Shown one piece after another: positions 1 to 62,975 of a stretch of 64,000 bases of DNA. The notes beneath the pieces were generated by a model. It was not told where the DNA came from. It saw nothing but the letters and a program-made list of their open reading frames with translations, and ran no database searches. The translations under genes and the position numbers were made by a program. Position 1 is the first letter of the stretch, and each line of letters begins with the position of its first letter. The stretch spans positions 1 to 64,000 of IMG/VR virus record IMGVR_UViG_3300042305_001773; one strand, written 5' to 3'.

Positions 1-371
1 ATCACGTAGGTACGCAGCTCGTCGACGTCCTTCACAGCGCGGGGCGACACGATCCGGTCAAACATGACGCGGTAGCGCGGGCCACGGATGTAGAAGTTAA
101 TCGGGAGCGTCGCAAACGGGAGCGACACAGCCGCCGGGGAATCGGGCTCCTTGTCCACCACCTTGACGGGCTTGTCAGTGTCAACCTGACGGTCAAGCTC
201 GTCGTTGGTGATGGTCAGCGGCGGCATAATCCGCCGGTAGAACCCGTCTTCACGCATCTTGGTGCGCGTGAAGTCATTAACCGCGTCGATGGCCTGCTTC
301 TGCATGCCGGGGGTATCGAGCTGCTCAAAAAGCGTTTCGTTGAGCAGTTGGATCTCTTGCTGAGTGGGCAT
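1..371 (-). CDS. Major capsid protein, N-terminal part (runs off window)
   Basis: Manual translation MPTQQEIQLLNETLFEQLDTPGMQKQAIDAVNDFTRTKMREDGFYRRIMPP...; GGAGG RBS at 380-384; follows protease, scaffold-like and decoration-like genes. Confidence 0.7.
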   Translation of the reverse strand, partial: MPTQQEIQLLNETLFEQLDTPGMQKQAIDAVNDFTRTKMREDGFYRRIMPPLTITNDELDRQVDTDKPVKVVDKEPDSPAAVSLPFATLPINFYIRGPRYRVMFDRIVSPRAVKDVDELRTYV

Positions 372-13343: not shown

Positions 13344-16300
13344 TTACGTATTATCTTCCACAATATGCACCGGGGTGTCCACCTCTATTTCGCCGCGTCG
13401 GTATGCCTGTACGGCATCCTGCTTGCTACGAAACACGCGGGGTTTGGCTTTTTTACTGATCCGACTGGACGCCAAGTATAACCCAGTCTGGTAGTCTTTG
13501 TTCGGAACGTAGTGCGCGCGAAAGGTAGACGCAGCAAACAAATTTTTGCTCGGCAGCATCTTTTCAACGGCTTCTTTCGCGGCGTCTTCTGTACTTGGGA
13601 CGTGATACTGCATCGCGTCTCCGTCGAAGTCGGCGCCAAACCCCTTGGTGATCACGGGGTTTACTTCCATAACTTTGTTCTTCGTCAGCTTAGGGTAAAA
13701 CGCCATCATGCCGTAACGGTGTAAAACAGGCGCGCGATTAATAACAATCGGTCGCGACGACATCTGACGGTCAAGCTCGGCGAACGCTTCTTTATTCTTA
13801 TCTTCAACCGCCTGCATCGCCTGCATGCGCGGGAGGCCCCGACGGACGAGGCCGCGGACGACAAACGGTTTGTAAATGTCCCACGCTTTCTCTTCCGGTA
13901 GCGCAACCTCGTCCATATCCAGATCGGGGTTTGGTGTGATGACAGCGCGGCCGACGAGATCTACCGTCGAGCTAAGCAGTTTGCGCTGAACGGTGCCGTA
14001 CTTTGGCGAGTTACCGAACACGTGCCGCAGGAAACCTTTGACATTACGCTCGACGTTCTTGGGCTGCTGCGGCTCGCCTAACCCGGTAACAGCCTTCATT
14101 GAGTCGTACACACTTAGCCGCTCGTCGCCGTAATCAGTTAGCGCGCCAGATGCTTCTTTCAGCGTGTCGTTGGCGTCGAGCAGTTCTTTGTACAAATAGT
14201 TAGCATCAGCTACGAGCGGGAGCTTTTTACTTCCCATTGTGCTCACGGGACGGAAGAGCGGCGGCAAGACTGGTACTTTACTGATCATCCAGTCTTTAGG
14301 GTGCACGCCGGTTGTTTCAGCACTCTTCAAAAAACCCAGCCGGCGCACGGCAGCGTCGCGTAGCGTCTTGCGCCCGGACTTGATATCTAAACGAGCCTGC
14401 TCAATTGCCTTCGGTAAGTTAATTCTTTCGAGCGCGGCTTTGATCGCTGTCGGGCCGGTTTTATCGCCCAGCTGCTCTCGGCCGGCCAGCACACCGCGGA
14501 ACTGCTTCTCGGTCAGGCCAAGCACACGGCGAATCGGGTCTTCCATGACGGGGTTAGGCAGCGGCTCGTGCAACGTGATCTTGCTCCACCGATTACCGCC
14601 GTGACCGCCTGTTAATGTCTCGTCAAACAGCCCGCCTGCAATAGGCTTGAGCCGCCCTTTCCAGTCCACGGTCTCGGAACTCTTTAGCTCGCGCGCGCCT
14701 GCCAGCTCGTCGACGTCTTTGTCGGTCATCGCCATCAAGTTTGAGCGCGTACCCTTGCGCACAACGTTGATACCCGACGCCTTGAGTTGGGTGACAAACT
14801 TCTCGTAAACGTGCGGTACTTTAGGCAGCGGCGGCGTATATCCGGCCATGAACTGCGACCAGTATTCGGGGTTAGCTTGGCCGCGCACCATCTTGGCATC
14901 GCGAATAACCTTGCCGGCACCGTGTGACAGTAACGCGCCCAGATCCAACATGCCGATGCGCTTGGCGCCTTCGCTGCCACCTTTTGCTGGTGTACCTTCG
15001 GCGGTATACGCGCCCATCGACCGGCCTTGCGCCTTTGACTCGCTGGTGTGGTGCAACTTCATGAAGAACCGGTTGCCAGTGAGGACGCCGCCGATTTTAC
15101 GTCCAGTTTCTGGATCGATAACGTCTTCGGTATCTGACAGGCCGTGCGCTGCTAATTCTTTCTGCGCAAACTCAATCAGGTCGCGTTTGTTATCAAAGTC
15201 CTTGAGCTTGTACGGTTTGCCAGTCTTTGCCGCAACTTTACCCAGCGCAGCCTCGATAACTTGCGTCGGGTTAATGCGGCTGATCAGACCCAGCGGCGAG
15301 ACAAGAACTTCAAACGGGTTACCATCGCGATCCTTGGGCATCTGGTCGTCAGGTACGATCTCGGCAACGACGCCCTTATCACCGAAGCGCCCCGTGAGCT
15401 TATCGCCGACGTCCATGGGTGCTTGGTTCTTCACTACAACGCTCACACCCTTCTTGGTGTGCATAACGTCGGTCACGATACCGGGGGCATGATGCTCCCA
15501 CGTGATTGTCTCGTTGGTGAAGTTACCGGCACGCCCACGATGCACTTTGCCGTACACCGTGTCTTTCTTCTTTGCCACAAGCACAAGTGGATCACCAAAC
15601 TTAACCTCAGTGCCCTTTTTGATGGCGCCGTCGTCGTCAAAGTTGTCGAGATACTTTTTGTCGTACTCAGTCGGGAACAAACTCACGAACGCCTTCTTGC
15701 CAACGTGAGTGTTGTCGTCCCACTCGGCTTCGTGCTGATACATGTGCTCAGACGTCAGCCGCTTGGATGCAGATTCAGAAATAACTACCGCGTCTTCGTA
15801 GTTCTTGCCGCGAAACGGCAGATACGCCGTACGTAGATTAAGCCCTAGCGCGGCGCTGCCGTTTTGGTCAGTAAAGTTTGACCGCGCCAGCAGCTGTCCG
15901 GGTTCGACTGTGTCACCCGGTTTCACAAGCGGCGTCTGGTGTAAAAACGTTTTACGGTTGTACGGCATTTCGTTGTACAGATCGATCGTCTTCTTGTTAC
16001 CATCTTTGTCGCGCAGCACGATACCGTCAGGTGTCACGTCCACTACTTGTGCCCGCTCAGTAGCCCGTGTGGCGCCCAGCTTCTCGCCCATCTCGTCTTC
16101 GTGCGACACGCTTTCGTCGTCAGCCTTGGCAGACTGCAACAGCGGCGCCTCGGCGTTTACGAGCGGAAGCGCCTGCGTAAACATTCGGCTACCCATGATC
16201 ACGCGATGACCTTTGATCATGGATTTAATCGGCACCATGTTTGTGAGCGCCGAAAACGTCGTGTCCATGTTGGGCAGACTGAACTGCGCTTCTTTTTTCG

Positions 16301-17747
16301 GCACGTATTTCAGCTTGCCGTTTACGAGCGCGGCTACAACAGGCAGGTTGTTATCTTCTTCGCCCGGAAATACTAGCGGTGTGTCGGCCAGCTCTTGTGG
16401 TGTCTTGTACACCTTCTCGCCGGTTTTCATATCTATAACCGGCGTATACACCTTGCCGTCGGAGCCCTTCATGGCGCCGCGAGCAAACCGCATGTCGACA
16501 CCCACTTTTCCAGACTCGGGCGTGCGAAGGTAGTCGATAAACCCAAGGTGGCTGGGCTGCACAGAACGCGACTCAGCGGGCACGGCGTCGAGCGAACCGA
16601 TGCCGCCCTCACCCATGCGCGTTACACGGGTCTGGTGGTCAAAGATCTCAGCCGGGTTGATTTCTTCAAGACTCGACCCCAAACCGCTGCCAATAAGCGC
16701 AGCTGAGATTGCCTTGTCGAATACACCCGACGGAATGTGATCAATTGACTTCTTCGCCGTGGCTTTCCAGAGTAGCTTGTTAAGAGACTGCCGGTCTTTG
16801 GTAAACCGCTCGGCAATGAGGTCTTCCGGGCCGACGACGGACTGATACACCATGTTGTCTCGGTCGTCGCTCTCGGCCTCGCGGCGATTCACTGCGATTA
16901 ATTTCTTAGTGATCGCCAGAATCGTCTCCGGCGTCATGTTCTTGTATTCAGAACCCAGTGTGCGCCGGGTGACTTCCGGGTCGAGTTCGGTCTTGGCAAA
17001 CTCGGCCGCGATCGCCTGCGCTTTGGCAATGGCGTCTGCGCCCGCGACTGGTTTATTTACAAGCCGGGCGTAAATTTTATCCAGCGTACCCGCATCGCCC
17101 TTCTCCATGTTGACCGCGGTGATCTCGTTGCCCCATGCTTTGCGAATGTCCTGATCCGACACGCCCATAGATTTGAGCAGCGGCATGAGCGGGATCTGCG
17201 CCTGCCCGATGCTGATCTTAAACACGCCAGTCTTGGGGTCGAGGAAGTACCGGTGCGAGCGACCCTTACCCGGAAGCGTGTTTACATGCGCCTCGATTTC
17301 GCCGTTGTCTTTTTCGCGGGTAAACACGCCGGGACGCAACCGCATTTGGTGCGCAAGGGTGTACTCCACACCGCCGTTCACAAACGTGCCAGAGTCGGTG
17401 AGGTACGGCACGTGAGCGATCGTGGCGCGGCGCTGGCCTACAGGCTGGCCGGTTTTGTTATCTGTAAGCGTCCACGTACCTTGCAATCGCCGGGCGAGTG
17501 TCCCTCTAGAAAGGACAGCTTTCTTTTGATCTGCCCTCGTGAAACGTTCAGGTCCTGTGTACCCGACGTCTTGAAGCTGCAGCGTATACAGGTCGTTCTG
17601 CAGCGGCTTGAGACTCTGCGCGCTGTTCAGCGCCTGATTGAAAATGTTATCGCGCATCATGCCAACATCGCCGAATGTGCGCATTGTGGGCGCAACGGGC
17701 GCGGGCATCATCGACGACTTTAGCTCGGGCAGCTCGGGGGCTGGCAT
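13344..17747 (-). CDS. rpoB: RNA polymerase beta fused to beta' N-terminal half
   Basis: beta motifs RTPESGKVG, NYEDAVVIS, GDKLTGRFGDKGVV, MKLHH; beta' motifs VPVLPPLFRP, NRAPVLHR and catalytic GADFDGDAM. Confidence 0.95.
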   Translation of the reverse strand: MPAPELPELKSSMMPAPVAPTMRTFGDVGMMRDNIFNQALNSAQSLKPLQNDLYTLQLQDVGYTGPERFTRADQKKAVLSRGTLARRLQGTWTLTDNKTGQPVGQRRATIAHVPYLTDSGTFVNGGVEYTLAHQMRLRPGVFTREKDNGEIEAHVNTLPGKGRSHRYFLDPKTGVFKISIGQAQIPLMPLLKSMGVSDQDIRKAWGNEITAVNMEKGDAGTLDKIYARLVNKPVAGADAIAKAQAIAAEFAKTELDPEVTRRTLGSEYKNMTPETILAITKKLIAVNRREAESDDRDNMVYQSVVGPEDLIAERFTKDRQSLNKLLWKATAKKSIDHIPSGVFDKAISAALIGSGLGSSLEEINPAEIFDHQTRVTRMGEGGIGSLDAVPAESRSVQPSHLGFIDYLRTPESGKVGVDMRFARGAMKGSDGKVYTPVIDMKTGEKVYKTPQELADTPLVFPGEEDNNLPVVAALVNGKLKYVPKKEAQFSLPNMDTTFSALTNMVPIKSMIKGHRVIMGSRMFTQALPLVNAEAPLLQSAKADDESVSHEDEMGEKLGATRATERAQVVDVTPDGIVLRDKDGNKKTIDLYNEMPYNRKTFLHQTPLVKPGDTVEPGQLLARSNFTDQNGSAALGLNLRTAYLPFRGKNYEDAVVISESASKRLTSEHMYQHEAEWDDNTHVGKKAFVSLFPTEYDKKYLDNFDDDGAIKKGTEVKFGDPLVLVAKKKDTVYGKVHRGRAGNFTNETITWEHHAPGIVTDVMHTKKGVSVVVKNQAPMDVGDKLTGRFGDKGVVAEIVPDDQMPKDRDGNPFEVLVSPLGLISRINPTQVIEAALGKVAAKTGKPYKLKDFDNKRDLIEFAQKELAAHGLSDTEDVIDPETGRKIGGVLTGNRFFMKLHHTSESKAQGRSMGAYTAEGTPAKGGSEGAKRIGMLDLGALLSHGAGKVIRDAKMVRGQANPEYWSQFMAGYTPPLPKVPHVYEKFVTQLKASGINVVRKGTRSNLMAMTDKDVDELAGARELKSSETVDWKGRLKPIAGGLFDETLTGGHGGNRWSKITLHEPLPNPVMEDPIRRVLGLTEKQFRGVLAGREQLGDKTGPTAIKAALERINLPKAIEQARLDIKSGRKTLRDAAVRRLGFLKSAETTGVHPKDWMISKVPVLPPLFRPVSTMGSKKLPLVADANYLYKELLDANDTLKEASGALTDYGDERLSVYDSMKAVTGLGEPQQPKNVERNVKGFLRHVFGNSPKYGTVQRKLLSSTVDLVGRAVITPNPDLDMDEVALPEEKAWDIYKPFVVRGLVRRGLPRMQAMQAVEDKNKEAFAELDRQMSSRPIVINRAPVLHRYGMMAFYPKLTKNKVMEVNPVITKGFGADFDGDAMQYHVPSTEDAAKEAVEKMLPSKNLFAASTFRAHYVPNKDYQTGLYLASSRISKKAKPRVFRSKQDAVQAYRRGEIEVDTPVHIVEDNT

Positions 17748-46669: not shown

Positions 46670-46764
46670 AGTGCGGCCGTCGCGTTGCTAACAATATTCC
46701 GCCATTCTACTGCGCTTTATTCTATTACAAAAGCTGCGTTGGGCTGAAAACTCATTACGGCGCT

Positions 46765-46802: not shown

Positions 46803-46855
46803 CGCTGATAGCTAAAAAAACGCTTAGCAGCCGGGAGTGGTTAGCTCCCGGCTGC
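46802..46855 (-). terminator. Hairpin plus T-tract fused to boundary motif
   Basis: GCAGCCGGGAG/CTCCCGGCTGC stem, then TTTTTTTAGCTATCAGC on the minus strand. Confidence 0.7.
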
Positions 46856-46870: not shown

Positions 46871-47485
46871 TCACACTTCGGCGTCGTCGGGAAACAGGTC
46901 GTGTTCCGACCGTTCCCAATCGTTGTCGAAGCAGTTATCCTCGATCAGCTGCTCGAACTCGGCCTCGGCATCGTCTTCGTCTGCGGCGCCGTACAACTCT
47001 TCTTCGAGTTCACGGCGGGCGCGGGCGAAGCGAGCCTTGACCTTTTCCAGACCCTCGGCGTCGGTTTCCTGCACACCGTTGTTGGGGTACAGGCCGCCGT
47101 ACTGGGCCGCGCGGTCTTCGATCCGCCGGAGGTAGACCACAGCGGCACGGTAACTGGTGAACGTTGCGTCCCAGTCGCCATAGCCGTCGTAGTTCGTGCC
47201 TTCGGAGATGTAGAAGAAACCAGCGCGGTCCTCGACGTCGAGCGCAGCTTCGTAGCTGCTGGCCTCGCCATCGGACTTGGCGAGGCAGTCATCGCAGTAG
47301 TAGACGGGCTCCCATCCGAAGGAGTCCGTTTCACCTTTTACGATGACAGTCGCGTCGTTTGTGCACAGGCAGTTGTAGCCCTCGCACTTTTCGGTGGCGA
47401 CGACGAAAGTACCACCGGGGCCGGCTCCGAACTGCAAGGTTTTGCCATTGTCAGCGGGGATGCGGGCCTTAATCGTCAGTGCCAT
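46871..47485 (-). CDS. Acidic putative early protein
   Basis: AGGAG RBS; own promoter and terminator. Confidence 0.7.
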   Translation of the reverse strand: MALTIKARIPADNGKTLQFGAGPGGTFVVATEKCEGYNCLCTNDATVIVKGETDSFGWEPVYYCDDCLAKSDGEASSYEAALDVEDRAGFFYISEGTNYDGYGDWDATFTSYRAAVVYLRRIEDRAAQYGGLYPNNGVQETDAEGLEKVKARFARARRELEEELYGAADEDDAEAEFEQLIEDNCFDNDWERSEHDLFPDDAEV

Positions 47486-47565: not shown

Positions 47566-47598
47566 ACTAGATATACCCGGTTTTGGCCGTTTATTTAG
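47566..47598 (-). promoter_or_regulatory. Phage promoter P1
   Basis: CTAAATAAA-N14-TATATCTAGT. Confidence 0.75.
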
Positions 47599-47601
47599 AT
47601 A

Positions 47602-50199
47602 TCAGCGCCCGGGCTTGCCGGCCGGCTGTTGTCTGGCCGCGGCGTCAGCTTTAAAGCCGCCCAGTGTCTTCTTGCCATAGTGCGCGAGCAGAGGCGCAGA
47701 AGACGCCAGCATGTACGTGGGCAGGCCAATGAACGCCGACCGGCCGCCCTTGAGCTTCATCTGGCGCATGAGCTTGGCGCCCCGACGAGACGCATCAAAC
47801 TCAGACGCTAACATCGGCATAGAACCGACTGTGCCCGCAATCGCCGAGTTCCGAGAGTTGTCCTCGTTGTTTGAAAGCAGCGCGCCGGCCGTACCTAATC
47901 CAAGCGCGGGCCGGCCGATTTGATTACCGCGCATGAGCCACTTGCCGCCCATGTGGTGTCCCAGCTCGTGCGCCAAAACACCCGGATTTTTCATTCGCCA
48001 GATGTGCCCAATCGTGGGTTTTGATATCCCGATTCCCGGATTCGCTGGTGTATAAAACGCTGGAGAATTACGCACAATATCAGCAGCTGACCGGCGCATT
48101 CTGTACTTGATGTTATTCATGAGATCGCCAATCCAGTTGCCCGTTGTTTTAGGCGCTATTTTCGGGTCAATCTTGCTGGCGACGGTCAAATTATCTACGA
48201 CATCTACGCCCTGACTCTTCGCGTAGTCACTGATTTGCTGCCACGCTCTGTTCCTTTCCATCGTTACCGGGGTGTCAAACAATTCAGGGCGCGCCACACG
48301 GTTCATGTACGCAGTTAATGGCAAGCCAATCGCAGCATTTGTCGCGGGCATGCCACCGAGATACCAGCCCATCGAGTGCCCTAGACCGGGCTTAGCGGGT
48401 TCTTTTTTTTTAACTTCGGCTGCGCTTTTTTTACCAAAGCGCGCGGCAAAATCTGCGGGCGAGACCGGGCGCAATTGAAACGGCGCGGCGGGTGTAGCGG
48501 GTGCTGGGGTTGCTGCGGGCGGGGCTGGTGGTGCAGTAACCGGAGCTGCCGGGCGCTGAACAACCGGCGCAGGTTTAGCCTGCGGCGCAACAACCGGGGC
48601 CTGACGAACTGCTTGAACTGGCGCTGGTTTCGGCTGGGTTACGGCGGGGGCAGCAGGGCGTGGCGTCGGGGCTTGTGACGGCAAGCTCGTCGCGGCACCG
48701 CGTTGACTCATGTAAACGTCGCGCATTTTTTGATAAGTTTGCATTTTTTGCCATTCCGGCACGCCGTTGTTTACGTTTACCACATTCTTCATGTAGTTAG
48801 TGAGGTCTGCGGACGTGGGTCTGGCGGGCATCTTGAACGCTGTCTGCGCGGCGGCGGCCACCGGCTTTTTCGCAACCCCGCTGACCGCTTTACCGGCCAT
48901 GCGACCAATTGAGCCGAGTAAACCGGCCAGCTTCTCGCCGCCGACAGAATTAGCCGTCCCAAACGCTGCGTTACCTGTAATATCACCCGTCGAAGACAAC
49001 GCGCCGTATGAATTAATGGGATTGGCGTTGGGAGACGATCCGCCGCCAACAGGGGGTAGTTGGCCAGACGGGGCCGGGGAGCCCATGTTTGCTGGCTGGG
49101 CGGCGGGAGCCTGTGGTTGGGCCTGTGGCGCCTGTGCCTGCATGCCCATAGGCAGCGGCGTACCCATCGCAGGCATGGCGTAACGTTTAATTCCGGCGTT
49201 TGCAGGCATGCGGGCAGCCTCTCGGGCCTCAATTTCAGCCCTTTCATTCTCTATCGCCTGCATAATGGGCTGCGACAAAACCGCTGAGATCTTCGCTAAC
49301 AAGGGATTTATTACGTTATTTGGCTTTGTTTCCGAGTTACACCTTTCGCCCTTGGTTTTGACGACCTTGGGTGGATTTTCGCCTGCAACTGTTGGCTTAT
49401 CACTGGCCGGCTGCTCGATATAGACCTCTTTAGTATCCGCTTGCTTGGATAATTTCCTGTAAATATCGAGGGCTACAGAGTTTACAGCCGATTGTTTATA
49501 AGTTGTCATATTGGGTTTATTTGCAAAGGCTGCGTTAATGGGGGATTGGCTTGCGGTACCGGTGACATGGGGCAAAAACCCGACAACTCCACCAACACCA
49601 AGGTTCATGACACCGTTTGCGACCCCGATACCCTTCTCTAATGTCTCGGTGGGGAGTTCGCCGTACTGTGTGACATAGCGCTGGGTCTGATTCTGAAGCT
49701 GCTGGACGTCATTGAAGGCTTTAGTGGCCTTGTTGACGGTACTTTTATTAACGCCAGCGATTGTTTTAGGTAGTTTCGCGTTTACGAGCTTATCGGAGAG
49801 TTCTAATTGGCGCGCAGACAGAACAGCGGCGTTTGGGAGGCGCTTGAGTAGCCTGTACGAGCGCATGGGGTTAAAGAACAGCACGCTTTCCCTTGCCGCG
49901 TTGTTAAATAACTGCTGCAACATCGGCGAGCCAACCCGTTTTGATAGCATTCCGGCAGCTGCAAGGCCGGCGGTTGTGCCCAGAGTGCTTAATCCGGCGG
50001 CAGCGGCAGTGTCTCGGGCTGCGGCACCGGGAGAAAAGTCGGCTTTTTTGCTATCTGTATCTGACTCGGGCTCTTTTTTACTGTCAGACGCGTACATGGG
50101 GAGTTTCTTTTTGGTCGGATACTCATGCGCCCAGCGTTTAGCGATCTCTGGATGCTCGGCCCACAGAAACCTACGCTGTTTTTCAGACTTAAACGGCAT
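47602..50199 (-). CDS. Putative virion polyprotein with C-terminal Zn-metallopeptidase
   Basis: MPFKSEKQRRFLWA N-module; KKA, KQSA, KQA, KLA and KSA sites; LAHELGHH...EFDAS. Confidence 0.65.
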   Translation of the reverse strand: MPFKSEKQRRFLWAEHPEIAKRWAHEYPTKKKLPMYASDSKKEPESDTDSKKADFSPGAAARDTAAAAGLSTLGTTAGLAAAGMLSKRVGSPMLQQLFNNAARESVLFFNPMRSYRLLKRLPNAAVLSARQLELSDKLVNAKLPKTIAGVNKSTVNKATKAFNDVQQLQNQTQRYVTQYGELPTETLEKGIGVANGVMNLGVGGVVGFLPHVTGTASQSPINAAFANKPNMTTYKQSAVNSVALDIYRKLSKQADTKEVYIEQPASDKPTVAGENPPKVVKTKGERCNSETKPNNVINPLLAKISAVLSQPIMQAIENERAEIEAREAARMPANAGIKRYAMPAMGTPLPMGMQAQAPQAQPQAPAAQPANMGSPAPSGQLPPVGGGSSPNANPINSYGALSSTGDITGNAAFGTANSVGGEKLAGLLGSIGRMAGKAVSGVAKKPVAAAAQTAFKMPARPTSADLTNYMKNVVNVNNGVPEWQKMQTYQKMRDVYMSQRGAATSLPSQAPTPRPAAPAVTQPKPAPVQAVRQAPVVAPQAKPAPVVQRPAAPVTAPPAPPAATPAPATPAAPFQLRPVSPADFAARFGKKSAAEVKKKEPAKPGLGHSMGWYLGGMPATNAAIGLPLTAYMNRVARPELFDTPVTMERNRAWQQISDYAKSQGVDVVDNLTVASKIDPKIAPKTTGNWIGDLMNNIKYRMRRSAADIVRNSPAFYTPANPGIGISKPTIGHIWRMKNPGVLAHELGHHMGGKWLMRGNQIGRPALGLGTAGALLSNNEDNSRNSAIAGTVGSMPMLASEFDASRRGAKLMRQMKLKGGRSAFIGLPTYMLASSAPLLAHYGKKTLGGFKADAAARQQPAGKPGR

Positions 50200-50416
50200 G
50201 GCGTAGCTCAAACGATAGTGAACTCAGAGGAATTCCCGGATAGTTGGAGTTCGAACTAGTCGGAAAAACCTACGAGTTGGGCGGCGCGGCTGTTCCCAAG
50301 CTGAATACGCCCCATTTTGGCATACAAGGGCTGAGAAGAAAAGGGCGCTCGACGCGTCTGATACACTAGAGGGTGGCTTGGGGAATGCAATCAGGCGTTT
50401 CGACAAGGAGGTCGCC

Positions 50417-50746
50417 ATGAAAGTTCTAAGAATTATGTTATTTAGCCTGCTGTGCGTGCTGAATACGGGACTAGCCTGCGCCGATACCGTGTTAATGTTC
50501 TCCGCAGAATGGTGCAAATACTGCCAGATCGCCAAAAGGGATCTCTTGGAGAACAAAGACGAGGTGGCAGAGTGGAATGTTGAGGTGGTCGATGCTGATG
50601 CGAGCCGAGAAATGGTGCAGCAGTATGGCGTGAAAACGCTCCCGACGTTTATCTATCTAAATGACGCCGGGGAAGAAGTCGACCGGGTGGCTGGCTATAA
50701 GGGCTACAACCGGCTGAAGCGCTGGGTCGAGCGAAATAAGCGCTGA
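50417..50746 (+). CDS. Secreted thioredoxin-family protein
   Basis: Signal peptide, WCKYC, LPTF; AAGGAGG RBS; only convincing plus-strand gene. Confidence 0.9.
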   Translation: MKVLRIMLFSLLCVLNTGLACADTVLMFSAEWCKYCQIAKRDLLENKDEVAEWNVEVVDADASREMVQQYGVKTLPTFIYLNDAGEEVDRVAGYKGYNRLKRWVERNKR

Positions 50747-50844
50747 TATCTAAAGAAAGCGCTCGCAGCCCCGGGGCTTAGGCGGCACCCGGGGCTGCAA
50801 TACGCTTCCGCGCAGCAGTTAAGTTATTAACTACTGCGCACACA

Positions 50845-51501
50845 TCAGGTCGTCGCCGTGGCGAGGGCGGTGGCGGCCTTCACGGCCCGCCGGCCCTTGC
50901 TGTTCTTGATCGCCGTGGCGCGGGCCTTGGCGATCTCCTCTTTGTCCACACCCGCTGTGAAGAGGGTGTAGCAGGTCTCGGCGAGGACGCCGGCGGTGAC
51001 CGCGCAGGTGAGCACGCTCACCAGCTTGGCCGTGCCGACCGTCGCGCCAGCAGCGACCGCGAGGCCGCCGATGGTCGAGCCGACGATCACACCGCCGGTC
51101 ACGGCAACGCCGATGGCCGCGGCGCCGCACAGGATCTTGATGGCGTAGGTGTTCACCTTCAGCCAGTCCACGCTCTTCGTCGAGACGAGGTTGCGGACAT
51201 AGGCCAACGCCAACTTGGCATCCCCGGCGGCGCGCTTCATCTGGGTACCGATCCACGAGACGACCGAAGCCGCCCATTCGTAGATGGTGCTGAAGATGCG
51301 CCCCATGAACTCCCAGACCGACCGCCCGACCGCCAGCAGCGAGTCGAGCAGATTGTCGAGGGAGGAACCGAGACCCTTGCCGGCCGTCTCGCAGAAGCCC
51401 GGCTCGCGCCGCGGTGCTCGGGTGATCTTGCCAGTCTTGGACTTGGCTTTCACACCAGCGTGACCACCGACAGCGGGAGCAGCAGAAACTTGAACCGTCA
51501 T
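50845..51501 (-). CDS. Putative early membrane protein
   Basis: Hydrophobic Gly/Ala segments; own promoter and terminator. Confidence 0.65.
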   Translation of the reverse strand: MTVQVSAAPAVGGHAGVKAKSKTGKITRAPRREPGFCETAGKGLGSSLDNLLDSLLAVGRSVWEFMGRIFSTIYEWAASVVSWIGTQMKRAAGDAKLALAYVRNLVSTKSVDWLKVNTYAIKILCGAAAIGVAVTGGVIVGSTIGGLAVAAGATVGTAKLVSVLTCAVTAGVLAETCYTLFTAGVDKEEIAKARATAIKNSKGRRAVKAATALATATT

Positions 51502-51594
51502 CGCAACCTCTTCTTTCTATGGAGAGGAGTAAAGCTACACCTTACCCGGGTAACATGCGGGAGTATCGACAACACGCCGATACCAGAGAGGGTC

Positions 51595-51627
51595 ACTAGA
51601 TATACCCGGTTTTTCGGGTTTATTTAG
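51595..51627 (-). promoter_or_regulatory. Phage promoter P2
   Basis: CTAAATAAA-N14-TATATCTAGT. Confidence 0.75.
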
Positions 51628-51630
51628 TTA

Positions 51631-52140
51631 TCAGCCGTCCACGGTCTCCAGCGCGGGGGTGTTCTTGCTTCCCACGCGCATGTAGACCGCTTCCACCTGC
51701 AGTTCCGCTGCAGCCCGGACGTCGGCGACTTCCCTGCGGAGGTCACTGACGTTCTGCTGGATGGCAACCAGCATCTTGGCGATGTCCGACAGGCTCAGCT
51801 GATTGTTATCAGCCGGCGCTTGCGGATTGATCACCGAGAGCGTGTCCACCACCGACTCCAGCGCAGTCGTCACGGTCTCCGTCATCTCGGCGCGGGCGCG
51901 CTGTTCCCACGTCGCGATCATCTGCTTGGTCTCGGCCGCGTGAATGAACACGGCGCCGATACCCGCCTCGCTCGCCCGGCGAATCAGCTTGTACGCCGAC
52001 AGCTTGCCTCTTCGCTGCGCCGTCGACAGGTACTGCAGAATCGTCGACCGCTTGGGGTAATCCGCCGGGACCGCGTCGGCCAGCCGGATATACCCTGCGG
52101 GGACAGCATCAACACTCGTCACGATCTGTGCGCCATTCAT
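51631..52140 (-). CDS. Hypothetical protein, possible DNA-binding plus coiled coil
   Basis: AAGGAG RBS. Confidence 0.6.
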   Translation of the reverse strand: MNGAQIVTSVDAVPAGYIRLADAVPADYPKRSTILQYLSTAQRRGKLSAYKLIRRASEAGIGAVFIHAAETKQMIATWEQRARAEMTETVTTALESVVDTLSVINPQAPADNNQLSLSDIAKMLVAIQQNVSDLRREVADVRAAAELQVEAVYMRVGSKNTPALETVDG

Positions 52141-52219
52141 GCGCTCGTTCTCCTTAACAGAAAGATCCAGACCACACCCTGAAAACACATCAGGGCGTTC
52201 CCGGCGGCTGATTTAGATA

Positions 52220-53362
52220 TCAACCTAGAGACCGGGTCTTTAGCACCAGCTTTTCCTGCGCGGGCCATAACAGCATCTGCTGCATGGTGTCCGTGCTGGT
52301 GACATCCTTGAGCAGCTTGAGGGCTGCCTGCGGATTCGCCTGTATTACCTCGGGAGCTGGCTTCTCTTCTTTGCACGCCCGAGATAAGTCTTCATACCGC
52401 GTATACGTATCCCACACCCAATCCTCGCCGTTCTCGGGGTTGTGTTTTTTCAGCTCCCCGGTCACGTAATGATTGGTTTGCACAAGGCCGTGTTTCCTTG
52501 TGCGAATGTAGGTATGTTCCCCGGTATGTGTTACGACCGCGTGTTCTTTACTCTCGGTACCGACCACGTGCGCGAAGAATGGCACCATGGTTTGCTGCGT
52601 ACGGAGATGAAAGACAAGCTTCTCGTAACTTGGCATCTTGTCGCAGACTGCTCGGACCCGGTGTAACGCAGGCCACGCTTGGAGCAGGTCTTTAACAGAT
52701 GCCGCGGTGTTTGTCACGTAGGCAAACGCCGAAGTTAACGAACGCCACCAGCTCGTGTCTGTGTCGTCTTCGTCTTCTTCTTCGACGAGCGACTTCACAA
52801 TCGGAGCTTGGTTGACCACCAGCCCCCACTGGTCTGACATCGCGCTGACGACGCCCACCATGCCCGCTACGCCCACCGAAGTGTAGCTTTTGCGGCCACG
52901 ATGAAAGCGAATCAGCTTGGTGTGCTTCCCAGTGGAGGGAGGCGTCACCCAGTCCATGTTGCGCACAATGACTGGGCTAGAATTCACATCGAAGCTGGCG
53001 GAACTGCAGCCACAACCATACATCTCTGCGAGAGACGTAAAGTCGTAGATTAAGTTTCCCAGCAGGAGCTTGCCGACAGGAACTTCGGCGTGCCGCGCAA
53101 TGCACTGAAGTTCCTGCGGATACTCAAGGTCTGTACCCGTAAGGATCCAGCCCCCGAGTCGTCCGCCGCCGCTTGTCACGCTCTTTACGACACTTTTCAT
53201 GGTGTCAGAAAGGTGTGGCAGGATTTCCTCGTCGACATGGGTTTCCACGTCTTCAAGGATGGCCTGAATCGCGTCGCCGTTCTGACGCGCGAATCCAGCC
53301 CAGCGTTCGTCTGGAGGAGCATCCAGATCGATGTCGTGAATCTTCCCGGTGTAAAGTTTCAT
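52220..53362 (-). CDS. Acid ceramidase/NAAA-like Ntn hydrolase
   Basis: IDLDAPPDERW, nucleophile GCSS, RNMDW, VQTNH. Confidence 0.8.
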   Translation of the reverse strand: MKLYTGKIHDIDLDAPPDERWAGFARQNGDAIQAILEDVETHVDEEILPHLSDTMKSVVKSVTSGGGRLGGWILTGTDLEYPQELQCIARHAEVPVGKLLLGNLIYDFTSLAEMYGCGCSSASFDVNSSPVIVRNMDWVTPPSTGKHTKLIRFHRGRKSYTSVGVAGMVGVVSAMSDQWGLVVNQAPIVKSLVEEEDEDDTDTSWWRSLTSAFAYVTNTAASVKDLLQAWPALHRVRAVCDKMPSYEKLVFHLRTQQTMVPFFAHVVGTESKEHAVVTHTGEHTYIRTRKHGLVQTNHYVTGELKKHNPENGEDWVWDTYTRYEDLSRACKEEKPAPEVIQANPQAALKLLKDVTSTDTMQQMLLWPAQEKLVLKTRSLG

Positions 53363-53757
53363 GACTCGGCCTGCTCTTTCTTGGGCTTGGGCGACAGACC
53401 GAAGTCGTCGTCTTGGCCCGGAAAGGGGACAGGGATGTCGAGCTTGGCACAGCACTGCGCGACCAGATTTTCCAGCCGCTCGATGTACGCCAAGTGCAAC
53501 GCAGCCCGAGCGTCCACGATTTTTTGGAAGCGTTCTTCCAGCAGCCGTCGTGCGACCATCAGCTCTTCCGCTGACACGAGACTCAGCCGCAACCGATTAG
53601 TCGCTTCTTCGGCTTGCTCGATCCGCTCGAAGGCTTTGTTCAGCGTGACGGTTAGAAAACCGACCACTCTGCCCAACTCTTCGACCCTGTCCTCTGCCGG
53701 CTTCGACGGGTCTTCCGGCAACCACTTGTTGATGTCCGTCTCAAATGTCTGGCTCAT
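53359..53757 (-). CDS. Coiled-coil hypothetical protein
   Basis: AAGGAG RBS; ATGA coupling to the next gene. Confidence 0.65.
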   Translation of the reverse strand: MSQTFETDINKWLPEDPSKPAEDRVEELGRVVGFLTVTLNKAFERIEQAEEATNRLRLSLVSAEELMVARRLLEERFQKIVDARAALHLAYIERLENLVAQCCAKLDIPVPFPGQDDDFGLSPKPKKEQAES

Positions 53758-53826
53758 CGGTCATTCTCCTTGGCCGCGCAAAGCGGCGAAAAGACACAGA
53801 ACACCCCGACACACTACCGGGGTACC

Positions 53827-53859
53827 AGTAAATATGACGCGAATTACGCGTTTATTTAG
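53827..53859 (-). promoter_or_regulatory. Phage promoter P3
   Basis: CTAAATAAA-N14-CATATTTACT. Confidence 0.7.
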
Positions 53860-53919
53860 CTGCCGCTGATAGCTAAAAAAAGCGCCCGCAAGCGGCGGTC
53901 AAACCTGCGGGCGCTCTGC

Positions 53920-54144
53920 CTACTGGGCCGAGAGGGTAGTCCACTCGCCGCTGTAGGTCTCTTCCAGCGGATTGATGATCCGCGGCTTGGCTGCGTGGGA
54001 GACAGGCTTGGCGACAGAACGAGGCGCCGTGAGCGGAGCCGTCATTCTGTGCTGCATGTCGCGCCACGCCGGCGAGGGTTGGAGCTTGTCAGAGATCCAG
54101 CCGATCGCCGCAAGACCGCCAAAGATCATGAGGGCCGTGGTCAT
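53920..54144 (-). CDS. Small membrane protein
   Basis: N-terminal TM segment; own promoter and terminator. Confidence 0.6.
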   Translation of the reverse strand: MTTALMIFGGLAAIGWISDKLQPSPAWRDMQHRMTAPLTAPRSVAKPVSHAAKPRIINPLEETYSGEWTTLSAQ

Positions 54145-54208
54145 GGCTATTTCCTTTCCTATTAAGCACGACGGGCAAAGCGTAATTTTTGGCTTACGCC
54201 TATCCGTC

Positions 54209-54241
54209 ACTTAATATGACCGGAAATAGCATGTTATTTAG
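54209..54241 (-). promoter_or_regulatory. Phage promoter P4
   Basis: CTAAATAAC-N14-CATATTAAGT. Confidence 0.65.
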
Positions 54242-54329
54242 TGCGCATCCAGATGATGATATCTAAACCCGTATCTTCTTCTTCGTCGTCGTATTCGGTG
54301 GTCAGGATGTTGGGGCCGGCGTAATTCAT
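54234..54329 (-). CDS. Small acidic ORF, 31 aa
   Basis: MNYAGPNILTTEYDDEEEDTGLDIIIWMRTK; AGGAGG RBS. Confidence 0.4.
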   Translation of the reverse strand: MNYAGPNILTTEYDDEEEDTGLDIIIWMRTK

Positions 54330-54435
54330 CTGTACCTCCTGACGACATAAACGCAGAACGTGGCGCAATTATACGATTTTGATAACACGTCCCCTATTCT
54401 GTAAGAAAAAGCGATCAAATTTCTTACAACTAATT

Positions 54436-54520
54436 GACGTAACATATTGATACATAAGGACTTAGAGTATCTAAGCTTTTCTTGGTTGTTCTAAGTCCTT
54501 ATTTGACAGGTAGTTACGTC
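54436..54520. repeat. Pair of inverted 31-bp sites in an AT-rich gap
   Basis: GACGTAAC-N10-ATAAGGACTTAGA at 54436-54466 and its reverse complement at 54490-54520. Confidence 0.75.
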
Positions 54521-54764
54521 TAATAGCTAAAAAAAGGAGCGGCTGGCTTGTGCCGTGCGCGCTCCTGAGAACCGCTCATTACTGAACGGCTCTTGTTTGG
54601 AGGGCGCATGGCCCACCTCCTTTCTGCTGAAAGGTAAAAAACCTCGCCGGGAATTGCACCCGGCCTGCCACAAGCTTTTAAGGCTCGCTGTCGCGCACCG
54701 AACGTGGGCGACTGGCAGTGTCTCTAGTGAGATTCAGCCGCGTGGCCACGCAGCTTGACTAGCT

Positions 54765-54992
54765 CTAGACGGACTCGAACTCGGCGTCGATGACAGTGCA
54801 GTGCTCGAACTCGTCATCGTTGAGAATCGCGCGCTCGGCCGGAATGCACTCGCACACTCCGATCTCGCGGTGGCAGTGACAGCAGCGCTCTGTGTCGGTG
54901 TCGGGCACCGGCATTGCAAGCGCCACCATCCAATCCCGGTAGTCGTCCACGTTGACTTTGACCTTCGGGTTATTGCGCAACTGAGCCATCAT
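54765..54992 (-). CDS. Small Cys-containing hypothetical protein
   Basis: AAGGAGG RBS; CCHC..CEC. Confidence 0.6.
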   Translation of the reverse strand: MMAQLRNNPKVKVNVDDYRDWMVALAMPVPDTDTERCCHCHREIGVCECIPAERAILNDDEFEHCTVIDAEFESV

Positions 54993-55161
54993 CTCGTCCT
55001 CCTTGAGGAGATAAAACGCCACCGTTCTCGTTGGTGGCCTACGCTTGCAGGTCGTCTGCAAGACCGCCCTGTTAGACCCGAACAGGAGACAGGTAGGGAT
55101 TGCTTAGCGAGTACGTAAAGCACGTGGCTATACCACGGCCGCGGCACCGCTATAGGTCCCT

Positions 55162-55194
55162 ACTAGATATGCCCGCTTTTTTGGGTTTATTTAG
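55162..55194 (-). promoter_or_regulatory. Phage promoter P5
   Basis: CTAAATAAA-N14-CATATCTAGT. Confidence 0.75.
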
Positions 55195-55306
55195 CTGGGC
55201 CGGGATAGCTAAAAAAAAGCCGGCAGGGGAGCGCACCCCTGCCGACTCTTGGCGAATTAACGAGTCGCCACCCGTGCCGAAGCGACCAACCGGTCGCCAA
55301 AAGAAT

Positions 55307-55657
55307 CGTTAGCACATGTCATGCCTGTAAGGACAGGTATCACTACCCGCCTACGGTCTGCAGCCGTTTGTTAGGTCACAGACAAACAGGTGGTGTACGG
55401 CCACTTGTTTTTGTTATTTAAAACTAGTCTGGCAGGTCTTTCACCTGCACCGCTCGCTCCCCTAGCCATAATGTTAGCGTAGTCGAACGGAGTCGCTTGT
55501 AGTAGCCACGAGGCCCGGGCGGGGCTGCCCGCTACTACGTAATCTACCCTAACGGTTCCTGCAAAACATTTCACCGCGCCTGCTCGTTACAAACGCGTAC
55601 GTGCACCTAGAGATAGGTTCATACACACGCTTCTTACAGGCATGACATGTGCCAACG
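55307..55657 (-). ncRNA. Large structured ncRNA candidate, about 350 nt
   Basis: 27-bp terminal inverted repeat with 2 mismatches; internal stems GTAGTAGC/GCTACTAC and GCAGGT-GAAAG-ACCTGC. Confidence 0.6.
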
Positions 55658-55681
55658 TCTGGATTCTAGCATCCATGTTGG

Positions 55682-62874: not shown

Positions 62875-62975
62875 GGCATCCTCCTCGCATAGCCCGAATG
62901 TGTGTGCTCAATCCCGCAAACACGTATTTGCGGGGCACAAAGAATATGCCTTGATATTGCCAGATATTTAGGCAA

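What the first reader, a model, noticed from the sequence alone, without database searches (positions are those of the whole stretch)
47566..55194. Five-copy non-sigma70 promoter with invariant 14-nt, often self-complementary spacer
Seen on the minus strand: CTAAATAAA-N14-YATATYTAGT consensus at 47566, 51595, 53827, 54209 and 55162, each upstream of a small gene. Spacers differ in sequence, yet four keep dyads (CCCG..CGGG, ACGCG..CGCGT, CGG..CCG, CCC..GGG); P4 does not. Established: N4 vRNAP uses hairpin promoters. Inference: early promoters for the phage RNAP, possibly structure-dependent.
Basis: partly seen in the sequence, partly recalled or inferred. Interest (0 to 1): 0.8.

Follow-up and report, generated by a model that had tools for sequence, protein, structure and literature searches.

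The report
Conserved bipartite jumbo-phage promoter motif
An uncultured 205-kb freshwater phage that encodes its own multisubunit RNA polymerase carries six copies of a rigid, 35-bp, non-sigma70 promoter-like signal in front of short terminator-bounded gene cassettes; the signal is real and conserved across a whole clade, but it is read as sequence, not as an N4-style DNA hairpin.

Summary
The five sites exist exactly as described (chance expectation 0.01). A sixth, weaker site lies at 62939-62971. The motif is conserved at orthologous positions in at least 10 related ~200-kb IMG/VR phage contigs, always with the same spacing (62 unique sites at N14, 0-1 at any other spacing). With a strict pattern, it is confined to one cluster of 15 kb or less per genome. 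It fails a lenient sigma70 test and never occurs more than once in any of 185,579 bacterial species genomes.

The "spacer" is not free: positions 15-17 (AAW) and 19-23 (CCGGK) are conserved. The dyads are barely above what composition predicts, have no fixed register, and are absent from many relatives. The N4-like hairpin idea is therefore rejected.

The geometry is CTAAAT-17 nt-YATATY, followed by conserved T33-G34-A35. Covarying 5'-terminal RNA hairpins begin at position 34, which places the start at about G34.

The phage RNAP (a beta-beta'N fusion plus beta'C) is homologous to that of Salmonella phage Arash, where beta, beta' and a sigma-family protein were detected in virions. The best reading is a lineage-specific early promoter for the phage's own RNAP. 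This is a new member of a known kind and of moderate interest.

The parts
55162..55194 (-). Promoter-like site P1 (CTAAATAAA-CCCAAAAAAGCGGG-CATATCTAGT). It drives a 75-aa Cys-rich ORF at 54765-54992.
   Evidence: Exact match; PWM 48.7 bits; orthologs in L008, L010, L012, L013, L014. RNA contig 54910-55151 starts 10 nt after position 34, with no RNA coverage across the motif itself.
54209..54241 (-). Promoter-like site P2 (CTAAATAAC-ATGCTATTTCCGGT-CATATTAAGT), with no dyad. It overlaps the stop codon of a 30-aa acidic ORF and drives a 74-aa ORF at 53920-54144.
   Evidence: 2 mismatches; PWM 43.0 bits; orthologs in all relatives. The 5' hairpin starts at position 34 (group B).
53827..53859 (-). 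Promoter-like site P3 (CTAAATAAA-CGCGTAATTCGCGT-CATATTTACT). It drives an operon of a 132-aa ORF (53359-53757), a 380-aa Ntn-hydrolase-like ORF (52220-53362) and a ~170-aa DUF7262-like ORF.
   Evidence: The L008 ortholog has CGTGT instead of CGCGT, an uncompensated change in the dyad.
51595..51627 (-). Promoter-like site P4 (CTAAATAAA-CCCGAAAAACCGGG-TATATCTAGT). There is no terminator upstream. It drives a 218-aa ORF at 50845-51501.
   Evidence: Exact match; PWM 53.1 bits. RNA contig 51567-51766 reads through it. Orthologs replace the CCCG..CGGG dyad by AGCC..CCGGG or GCCG..CCGGG.
47566..47598 (-). Promoter-like site P5 (CTAAATAAA-CGGCCAAAACCGGG-TATATCTAGT). It drives a 204-aa ORF at 46871-47485.
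   Evidence: Exact match; PWM 51.0 bits. In L012-L014 its ortholog lies only ~900 nt after the P4 ortholog, so 47.6-50.75 kb is an insertion.
62939..62971 (-). Sixth, weaker site P6 (CTAAATATC-TGGCAATATCAAGG-CATATTCTTT), upstream of a 194-aa NTF2/SnoaL-like ORF at 62109-62693.
   Evidence: PWM 23.8 bits. Conserved orthologs in L008, L133, L025, with a 5' hairpin starting at position 34 (group D). Fold lead only for the protein.
55204..55250 (-). Intrinsic terminator with the conserved tail T8-AGCTATC. It ends the abundant ncRNA and is phased with P1.
   Evidence: hairpin dG about -24 to -27 kcal/mol. Depth drops from 441 to 0 across it.
54522..54566 (-). Intrinsic terminator with tail T7-AGCTATT.
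53868..53914 (-). Intrinsic terminator with tail T7-AGCTATC, phased with P3.
50745..50798 (-). Terminator between convergent genes, with tail TTTCTTT-AGATATC.
   Evidence: dG -31.5 kcal/mol; thioredoxin gene on the + strand at 50378-50746.
46807..46855 (-). Intrinsic terminator with tail T7-AGCTATC, ending the P5 cassette.
13344..17747 (-). Phage RNAP beta fused to the N-terminal half of beta' (1467 aa). This is the candidate enzyme that reads the motif.
   Evidence: Pfam Rpb2 domains 2, 3, 6 plus Rpb1 domains 1, 2; 32.6% identity over 1508 aa to Arash gp206.
10484..12364 (-). Phage RNAP beta' C-terminal half (626 aa).
   Evidence: Pfam Rpb1 domain 5; homolog of Arash gp216.

Best explanation
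The sites are copies of one lineage-specific, rigid, bipartite promoter. Its consensus is A-G-CTAAATA(W)(N) - N4 - A-A-W - N - CCGG(G/T) - (C/T)ATAT(C/T)TA - N - T - G(+1)-A.

Its upstream block (CTAAAT) and downstream block (YATATY) are separated by exactly 17 bp, which is the geometry of a -35/-10 promoter. Transcription most likely starts at G34 (34-36), and the RNA immediately folds into a 5'-terminal stem-loop.

Each promoter heads a short cassette of accessory or early-type genes that ends in an intrinsic terminator with a conserved tail (T-run + AGCTATC). Where a terminator and a promoter adjoin, they are phased: AGCTA to C1 is 15-17 nt.

The signal is read as double-stranded sequence, not as an extruded hairpin. 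It is not the host sigma70 holoenzyme.

Shown: the motif, its significance, rigid spacing, conservation, clustering and non-sigma70 character, its absence from bacterial genomes, the terminator phasing, the onset of RNA structure at position 34, and RNAP homology to Arash.

Inferred: that it is a promoter, the exact start site, which polymerase reads it, early timing, and virion delivery.
For: - **Real and rigid.** Five exact or near-exact sites against 0.01 expected. PWM scores of 43-53 bits with a clean gap to background. Spacing is invariant in 62 unique sites.
- **Conserved.** The motif sits at orthologous positions in relatives whose neighbouring protein is only 54-94% identical, and in much more distant ~200-kb contigs. 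Summed information is about 49 bits over 37 columns (my sum of the table; an upper bound because sites were found by pattern).
- **Clustered.** An uncapped strict scan finds it only at 47-55.2 kb of the 205-kb source contig, and in one cluster of 15 kb or less in each related genome.
- **Not sigma70, not host.** None of the sites passes a lenient sigma70 scan, and C replaces the -7 T in half of the sites. By contrast, a true sigma70-type promoter 500 nt upstream shows the classic footprint of conserved hexamers with a free spacer. The motif gives 20 single hits in 596 Gb of bacterial genomes, about the chance level and never two in one genome. Only one hit is clade-type, and it is a mis-binned phage fragment.
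- **Start site.** G34/A35 are conserved. Stems that begin at the first base of a sliding window jump from 0.10-0.14 (shuffle baseline 0.14) at positions 33 and below to 0.31-0.33 at positions 34-37. In ortholog group A, 15 pairs start at column 1 and 5 have compensatory double changes. A metatranscriptome contig covers 54910-55151, the motif itself has no coverage, and the upstream RNA (441x) stops at the terminator.
- **Polymerase.** The RNAP genes are in the window. Beta, beta'C, helicase, a structural protein and the major capsid protein are syntenic homologs of Arash gp206, gp216, gp217, gp222 and gp226. In Arash virions, gp206 was the protein with the most spectra, and gp216 and the sigma-family protein gp10 were also detected (PMC10585845; gp10 Pfam Sigma70_r3 9e-9).
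- **Precedent.** RNAP-encoding jumbo phages each have their own conserved AT-rich early-promoter motif near -10 (PMC7598289; PMC5312081; PMC8244752).
Against: - No transcription start has been mapped. The only RNA data are low-depth metatranscriptome contigs without strand information.
- No sigma-family gene was found in the window or in about 400 kb of clade loci. Three profile scans of IMG/VR reached sigma homologs only in Arash-like and other contigs, not in this clade. The other 141 kb of the genome could not be read.
- Known vRNAP early promoters of phiKZ/AR9 are single AT-rich blocks and number 28-41 per genome, not a bipartite signal in 5-7 copies.
- Sigma70-type promoters in the same region (55690-55663, conserved) show that host RNAP is probably also used, so a host core redirected by a phage factor cannot be excluded.
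- Arash's own repeated motifs look nothing like this one.
- The clustering claim rests on a strict pattern that misses variants such as P3 and P6.
Confidence: 0.6

Rival explanations
1. Host RNA polymerase core reads the sites after being redirected, either by a phage-encoded sigma or activator (as with T4 MotA/AsiA or gp55, or SPO1 gp28) or by an alternative host sigma. The phage's own RNAP would serve other gene classes.
For: The -35/-10-like geometry with a 17-bp gap is the hallmark of sigma70-family recognition. Conserved sigma70-type promoters nearby suggest host RNAP is active on this DNA. The small regulon of 5-7 sites in one cluster resembles a delayed-early or middle class.
Against: No bacterial species genome carries the motif more than once, so it is not a known host sigma regulon. 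No sigma or activator gene was found in the window. In the related Arash, the sigma-family protein was detected in purified virions together with the phage beta and beta'. About 49 bits and absolutely rigid spacing are unusual for primary-sigma promoters.
Confidence: 0.2
2. N4-like, structure-dependent promoters: the spacer dyad is extruded as a hairpin that the virion RNAP recognises.
For: Four of the five window sites contain 3-5 bp dyads. Mean stem length is slightly above the null (P 0.02-0.03). Like N4 (three early promoters), the promoters are few and clustered.
Against: N4 hairpins have 5-7 bp stems with a 3-nt loop centred at -11, with interchangeable stem bases that keep pairing. Here the stems are 2-5 bp, the loops 4-8 nt, the centre is near -17, and there is no fixed register. 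8 of 27 sites have no fold. Orthologous sites lose the dyad without compensation (CCCG..CGGG to AGCC..CCGGG; CGCGT to CGTGT). Distant clade members have dyad-free spacers (GACAGAAAACACGG, AGCATAAATTACGG). The 3' arm is a conserved sequence block. The RNAP is multisubunit, with no N4-type giant vRNAP gene in the window.
Confidence: 0.04
3. The sites are not promoters. They would be operators for a dimeric phage regulator (the outer blocks CTAAATA / TATCTAG are near-palindromic), or weak antisense terminators or insulators. On the plus strand they read as a short GC hairpin followed by TTTATTTAG(CT), mimicking the terminator tail TTTTTTTAGCT.
For: The plus strand at 51596 matches the motif with 3 mismatches. 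The terminator scan flags the plus-strand reading of P4 and P1. The promoter's upstream half, AGCTAAATAAA, is the reverse complement of TTTATTTAGCT, one base away from the real tails.
Against: All 62+ sites have one orientation relative to genes. Conservation is asymmetric: A-1/G0 on one side, T33-G34-A35 plus an RNA hairpin on the other. Inner positions are not symmetric (i+j tables). Antisense stems of 3-5 bp are too weak for intrinsic termination, and there are almost no plus-strand genes to insulate. Cassettes bounded by a terminator upstream need a promoter, and no other candidate is present in those gaps.
Confidence: 0.08

Closest known systems
[quoted passage not shown]
   Same: A phage with its own multisubunit beta/beta' RNAP. 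A highly conserved, phage-specific, AT-rich element of about 10 nt lies near -10, with the start a few nt downstream at a conserved G (AR9: AAATATATATTAT-N6-G+1). The phiKZ motif is described as an extended -10 box plus a T-rich tract upstream of -19; here there is an A/T tract at -19..-17. The motif is easy to find bioinformatically upstream of operons of small genes.
   Different: Here there is an additional invariant upstream block (AGCTAAATA at -35..-27) at a rigid distance and a conserved GC block (CCGGK). There are only 5-7 copies in one cluster of 15 kb or less, against 28-41 dispersed copies. The RNAP is one set with a beta-beta'N fusion rather than two sets of split subunits. The nearest cultured relative packages a sigma-family protein, which phiKZ-like phages lack. 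Virion location and early timing are untested for this phage.
Sigma70-family promoters of phage-encoded or alternative sigma factors (e.g. SPO1 gp28 and gp33/34, T4 gp55, FliA/sigma28 TAAA-N15-GCCGATAA)
   Same: Two sequence blocks with a fixed gap of about 17 bp, no match to the primary-sigma consensus, and a small dedicated regulon. The upstream block contains TAAA, as in sigma28 -35 elements (comparison from my own knowledge).
   Different: No sigma gene has been identified in this clade. The -10-like block (CGGKYATATYTA) matches none of the consensus sequences I know. If a sigma is involved, it would partner a phage RNAP core rather than the host core, judging from the Arash virion proteome.
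N4 virion-RNAP hairpin promoters
   Same: Few, clustered promoters in front of early-type genes of a phage that probably carries its RNAP in the virion. Short inverted repeats occur upstream of the start in some copies.
   Different: N4 uses a single-subunit T7-like enzyme inside a ~3500-aa protein and a 5-7 bp / 3-nt-loop hairpin centred at -11, extruded with the help of gyrase and SSB. None of these features is met here (see the membership test).
T7-type single-subunit RNAP promoters
   Same: A long, rigid, high-information, contiguous recognition site of about 23-35 bp, with conserved initiating G and each promoter followed by a structured 5' leader.
   Different: No T7-like RNAP gene was seen in the window. 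The site is longer and has a low-information gap.

Membership tests
N4-type vRNAP hairpin promoter | Inverted repeat giving a 5-7 bp stem with a 3-nt loop, centred at about -11 | tested here: not met
   Best stems are 2-5 bp and loops 4-8 nt. The dyad centre is near motif position 16-17, which is -17/-18 relative to G34. There is no fixed register, and 8 of 27 sites have no fold. The N4 definition comes from PMC4496689.
N4-type vRNAP hairpin promoter | Non-conserved stem bases vary but keep pairing (covariation) | tested here: not met
   Column-shuffle and half-swap nulls: mean stem 3.04 vs 2.74-2.77; stems of 4 bp or more 6 vs 3.6-3.8 (P 0.11-0.17). Orthologs lose dyads without compensation. 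Distant relatives lack them.
N4-type vRNAP hairpin promoter | Phage encodes a giant (~3500 aa) single-subunit virion RNAP | tested here: not met
   The largest ORF in the window is 1467 aa and is a multisubunit-type beta/beta' protein. The remaining 141 kb of the genome was not examined.
N4-type vRNAP hairpin promoter | Activity depends on supercoiling (gyrase) and SSB | not testable with these tools
   Needs biochemistry.
Jumbo-phage vRNAP early promoter (phiKZ/AR9 kind) | Phage encodes multisubunit beta/beta'-like RNAP | tested here: met
   13344-17747 and 10484-12364: Pfam Rpb2_6 2e-50, Rpb1_2 2e-24, Rpb1_5 5e-24.
Jumbo-phage vRNAP early promoter (phiKZ/AR9 kind) | Highly conserved phage-specific AT-rich element near -10, with the start a few nt downstream | tested here: inconclusive
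   YATATYTA is invariant or nearly so and lies at -10..-3 relative to the inferred G34. However, the start site is inferred, not mapped.
Jumbo-phage vRNAP early promoter (phiKZ/AR9 kind) | The RNAP is a virion component and transcription is independent of new protein synthesis (early) | not testable with these tools
   Only indirect evidence: homologs gp206 and gp216 were detected in purified Arash virions (PMC10585845; homology).
Jumbo-phage vRNAP early promoter (phiKZ/AR9 kind) | Two separate RNAP sets (virion and non-virion) | tested here: inconclusive
   One set is present in the window. Arash is annotated with one beta, one beta' and two sigma genes. The rest of this genome is unseen.
Primary sigma70 (host) promoter | TTGACA-16..18-TATAAT with A at -11 and T at -7 | tested here: not met
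   None of the sites passes the lenient scan. The best register gives CTAAAT (2/6) and YATATY with C at -7 in 14 of 27 sites. Spacing never varies.
Sigma70-family promoter of a phage-encoded sigma | Two blocks about 17 bp apart | tested here: met
   CTAAAT(1-6)-17 nt-YATATY(24-29), invariant in 62 sites.
Sigma70-family promoter of a phage-encoded sigma | A sigma-family gene in the phage | tested here: inconclusive
   None found in the window or clade loci by tblastn, profile HMM or Pfam, nor on clade contigs by three IMG/VR scans. 141 kb of the genome remains unread. The relatives Arash and Vibrio D69/D148/D181 do have one.

The most novel reading that the evidence does not exclude
This widespread clade of ~200-kb freshwater phages would inject a multisubunit RNAP together with a sigma-like factor. 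That holoenzyme would read a rigid ~35-bp bipartite promoter found nowhere else. It would be a hybrid between bacterial sigma-type and phiKZ-type early transcription. Terminators and promoters would be fused into phased, exchangeable 'cassette boundary' modules, with the promoter's -35 block being the reverse complement of the terminator tail. One such module sits directly downstream of a novel, highly abundant ~440-nt structured RNA made from a host-type promoter.
Probability: 0.3. Interest if true: 0.6.

Novelty: new member of a known kind. Interest (0 to 1): 0.4.

Why it matters
The motif gives a concrete, testable promoter consensus and a predicted +1 for an uncultured but widespread lineage of large freshwater phages that carry their own cellular-type RNA polymerase. 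Nothing has been published on promoters for this lineage or for its cultured relatives Arash and the Vibrio D phages.

The -35/-10-like geometry, together with the sigma-family protein found in Arash virions, suggests that some phage multisubunit RNAPs use sigma-type promoter recognition. phiKZ and AR9 do not, so this would bear on how these enzymes evolved.

In practice, the motif and the phased terminator tail mark the early or accessory gene cluster in metagenomic contigs of this clade. They also provide compact orthogonal promoter and terminator parts to try with the phage RNAP.

It is also useful as a negative result. Apparent 'self-complementary spacers' in five copies were a by-product of conserved GC-rich blocks around an A/T tract.

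Tried and rejected
- **Hairpin model.** Rejected by shuffling nulls, register tables, folding and comparative data.
- **Host sigma70 and host regulon.** Rejected by the consensus scan and the bacterial-genome scan.
- **Near-identical phages in INPHARED.** None found. The nearest RNAP is 32% identical.
- **Search for a sigma factor in this clade.** No result from tblastn or a profile HMM on the window and loci, Pfam/PHROGs on about 50 proteins, or three profile-guided IMG/VR scans. Walking off the window start was blocked because no DNA is served for the extending contig.
- **First design of the 5'-hairpin test.** Discarded. Including promoter bases in the fold let the GC block pair spuriously. 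Replaced by a sliding-window control.
- **X1 DNA 'loose ends' at 53864 and 55307.** These looked like rearrangements, but they are cross-matches of the shared terminator tail and of a 25-nt inverted repeat. No inversion is claimed.
- **Loose-pattern IMG/VR scan.** Only the strict pattern is uncapped, and it misses variants such as P3 and P6.
- **Arash motifs.** GGTATAAGTA and the AACGTTGTAACC elements are unrelated to this motif, so there is no cross-lineage consensus.
- **Rfam.** It gives nothing for the promoter region or for the upstream ncRNA.
- **ESM Atlas.** It gave no functional lead for the 204-aa cassette protein and only an NTF2/SnoaL-like lead for the 194-aa one.

Full report
**Observation**

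They are at 47566, 51595, 53827, 54209 and 55162, with 0, 0, 1, 2 and 0 mismatches, against 0.01 expected from shuffles. A sixth hit on the plus strand at 51596 reflects the partial palindromy of the motif. Each site lies 64-169 nt upstream of an ATG with a Shine-Dalgarno sequence.

**Context**

All long ORFs are on the minus strand. The window is the first 64 kb of IMGVR_UViG_3300042305_001773, a 205,044-bp contig, and window coordinates equal contig coordinates. The same contig is deposited as GCA_043528545.1 JBFDFD010002928.1. The DNA runs that hold it are lake-water and freshwater metagenomes.

The window encodes a multisubunit RNA polymerase:
- a 1467-aa beta fused to the N-terminal half of beta' (13344-17747);
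- a 626-aa C-terminal beta' (10484-12364).

There is no close relative in INPHARED. The nearest RNAPs, at about 32% identity, are those of Salmonella phage Arash and Vibrio phages D69/D148/D181. The beta, beta'C, a helicase, a structural protein and the major capsid protein (cut by the window start) are homologs of Arash gp206, gp216, gp217, gp222 and gp226.

**Conservation and distribution**

Pattern and protein-guided scans of IMG/VR brought in syntenic regions of relatives whose neighbouring Ntn-hydrolase-like protein is 54-94% identical. The motif is present at orthologous positions in all of them. It is also present in far more divergent contigs of about 200 kb.

- A-1, G0, C1-T-A-A-A-T-A7;
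- A15, A16, W17;
- C19, C20, G21, G22, K23;
- Y24, A-T-A-T28, Y29, T30, A31;
- T33, G34, A35.

Only positions 10-12, 14, 18 and 32 are free. These columns sum to about 49 bits, which is an upper bound because sites were ascertained by pattern.

A PWM separates the five window sites (43-53 bits) from everything else. It reveals a sixth, weaker site at 62939-62971 (23.8 bits), which has conserved orthologs. It finds nothing in 1-47 kb.

Spacing is absolutely rigid: 62 unique sites at N14 and 0-1 at any other spacing.

An uncapped strict scan (CTAAATA-N12-CGGKYATATYNANT) found 30 stretches in all of IMG/VR. Within the source contig, all hits lie in 47-55.2 kb. Within each related ~200-kb genome, they form one cluster of 15 kb or less. 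The strict pattern misses variants such as P3 and P6, so this is a lower bound.

**The hairpin idea**

Four of the five window spacers do contain 3-5 bp dyads. Across 27 unique sites, however:
- the mean best stem is 3.04 bp, against 2.74-2.77 in nulls that keep column composition (P 0.02-0.03, not corrected for relatedness);
- stems of 4 bp or more number 6, against 3.6-3.8 expected (P 0.11-0.17);
- no pairing register is preferred;
- 8 sites fold to 0 kcal/mol even with RNA parameters.

Orthologous sites exchange CCCG..CGGG for AGCC..CCGGG or GCCG..CCGGG, and CGCGT for CGTGT, without compensation. Distant clade members have spacers such as GACAGAAAACACGG or AGCATAAATTACGG. The 3' 'arm' is simply the conserved block CCGGK.

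N4 promoters are defined by a 5-7 bp stem with a 3-nt loop centred at -11. Their stem bases are interchangeable so long as they pair. They are read by a single-subunit enzyme with help from gyrase and SSB (PMC4496689). None of the sequence-level features is met here, and the polymerase is of a different kind. I therefore reject structure dependence.

**Not a host promoter**

None of the sites passes a lenient sigma70 scan. In the best register the -35-like hexamer is CTAAAT, and the -10-like hexamer has C at -7 in half of the sites.

A useful internal contrast lies 500 nt upstream. TTGACG-16-TG-TAGAAT at 55690-55663 is conserved in relatives in the classic sigma70 manner: an invariant -35, TAGAAT alternating with TACAAT, and a freely varying spacer.

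In one genome for each of 185,579 bacterial and archaeal species, the strict motif gives 20 single hits, about what chance predicts and never two in one genome. Only one of these is a clade-type site, and it is a 2-kb phage fragment binned into a MAG.

**Where transcription starts**

Three lines of evidence agree on position 34 (34-36):
- G34 and A35 are conserved.
- With a sliding 45-nt window, the fraction of 51 non-redundant sites in which a helix of 4 bp or more begins at the very first base is 0.04-0.14 for starts at positions 26-33 (shuffle baseline 0.14). It jumps to 0.31-0.33 at positions 34-37.
- Within orthologous groups, these 5'-terminal hairpins start at column 1 and covary. Group A has 15 pairs, 5 with compensatory double changes.

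There is also some RNA evidence. The single available metatranscriptome (X14, contigs only, low depth) shows an RNA contig at 54910-55151, zero coverage over the P1 motif, and a 441x RNA that stops at the upstream terminator. Another contig (51567-51766) reads through P4, which has no terminator upstream.

With +1 at G34, the layout is:
- AGCTAAATA at -35..-27;
- the A/T tract at -19..-17;
- CCGGK at -15..-11;
- YATATYTA at -10..-3.

**Terminator-promoter modules**

The window has exactly five strong intrinsic terminators (dG -19 to -31 kcal/mol) with a conserved tail, T5-8-AG(C/A)TAT(C/T). All are on the sense strand and all lie within 46.8-55.2 kb.

Across the clade there are 77 unique promoter contexts. 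In 30 of them such a tail precedes the promoter. The AGMTA-to-C1 distance is 15-17 nt in 24 of those 30. In another 21 contexts..CTGAYAN abuts the motif.

The promoter's upstream block, AGCTAAATAAA, is the reverse complement of TTTATTTAGCT, one base from the terminator tail TTTTTTTAGCT. This is why the terminator scan flags the antisense reading of P1 and P4. I regard this resemblance as unexplained. The antisense hairpins are too weak to terminate, and there is nothing on that strand to insulate.

**Who reads it**

The literature states that every RNAP-encoding jumbo phage has its own conserved AT-rich early-promoter motif near -10, recognised by the virion RNAP (PMC7598289, PMC5312081, PMC8244752).

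The decisive lead comes from Arash. In purified virions, the beta homolog gp206 was the protein with the most spectra. Beta' (gp216), the helicase gp217 and a protein annotated as a sigma factor (gp10) were also detected (PMC10585845). gp10 is a genuine sigma70-family protein (Sigma70_r3 9e-9), and the alignment shows a region-2 motif and a C-terminal segment resembling a region-4 HTH. The Vibrio phages that share the RNAP also share this sigma. Arash has a second sigma gene, gp196, that is not in the virion list.

A virion-borne phage core with a sigma-type factor would naturally read a rigid -35/-10-like signal such as this one. I could not find a sigma gene in the window, in about 400 kb of clade loci, or on clade contigs by three profile scans. 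The other 141 kb of the genome was out of reach. This step therefore remains an inference. A host core redirected by a phage factor remains the main rival.

**Comparison and novelty**

This works like the early promoters of phiKZ/AR9-type phages: a phage-specific, high-information signal for a phage multisubunit RNAP in front of small-gene operons. It differs in several ways:
- it is bipartite, with rigid spacing;
- it has a conserved GC block;
- it occurs in only 5-7 clustered copies;
- it is fused in phase to terminators.

No paper in the library contains this motif in a phage-promoter context. The Arash paper and the paper on RNAP-encoding Caudovirales say nothing about promoters. It is a new member of a known kind. 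The feature that would have been surprising, a hairpin promoter, is not there.

Noticed in passing
window 55215-55690 (-): A ~440-nt non-coding RNA gene lies directly upstream of P1. It has a conserved sigma70-type promoter (TTGACG-16-TG-TAGAAT at 55690-55663) and ends in the terminator at 55204-55250. It is 82-93% identical in six relatives, and 93% in L014, whose neighbouring protein is only 54% identical. The consensus fold has 164 pairs, 28 with compensatory double changes, including a 25-bp closing helix (55307-55331 / 55633-55657). Metatranscriptome depth is 441x against 0-13x nearby. There is no Rfam family at gathering score or at E<=1. It looks like a novel, abundant, large structured phage RNA.
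   Followed up: partly
window 59464-59807 (-); tRNAs at 27339, 60031, 60110, 60921, 61405, 62032: The phage encodes a tmRNA (tag GTFNSVPALAA) and six tRNAs (Asn, Leu x2, Glu, Val, Lys), mostly just upstream of the promoter cluster.
   Followed up: no
window 28782-29816 (-): A 344-aa protein matches the Pfam Volactin family (actin-like, PF25216, E 8e-62) with a weak MreB hit. This is an actin-like protein in a large phage.
   Followed up: no
window 47602-50746: An 869-aa low-complexity, peptidase-like ORF and an oppositely oriented thioredoxin gene (50378-50746, +) form a ~3-kb insertion with reversed GC skew. L008 also has it. L012-L014 lack it: there the P4 and P5 orthologs are only ~900 nt apart.
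   Followed up: partly
window 54236-54530 (-): An AT-rich stretch with an inverted repeat (aaggacttag...ctaagtcctt) and a TATAAT-like box precedes a conserved 30-aa acidic ORF (MNYAGPN...IIIWMRTK). The ORF's stop codon lies inside the CTAAATAA of P2.
   Followed up: no
window ~46753-46792 (-): A tandem 19-nt repeat (ctctggtaactgtttttac x2) lies right after the terminator tail at 46807-46820, followed by a TAGAAT box ahead of the 671-aa ORF. It may be a different promoter class or a regulator site.
   Followed up: no
window 52205-52225 (-): An orphan upstream half-motif (GATATCTAAATCAGCC) without a downstream block lies between the Ntn-hydrolase-like gene and the DUF7262-like gene. It may be a decayed promoter.
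   Followed up: no
L185-L188 (Salmonella phage Arash OQ632216): Arash has two over-represented elements of its own. The first is about 28 copies of (T)GGTATAAGTA(AAGT), 20-35 nt upstream of start codons in the minus-strand gene block. The second is five divergent pairs of ~75-nt AACGTTGTAACC... elements at about 26.7, 66.4, 100.2, 138.5 and 173.3 kb. It also has two sigma genes, gp10 (in virions) and gp196. These are candidate promoter classes for its virion RNAP-sigma holoenzyme.
   Followed up: partly
L193 (RGVZ01000463.1, MAG 'bacterium isolate WB9_2_064'): A 2-kb contig in a bacterial MAG is identical to the phage locus L010/L011, including a promoter site. It is a phage fragment mis-binned into a MAG.
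   Followed up: no
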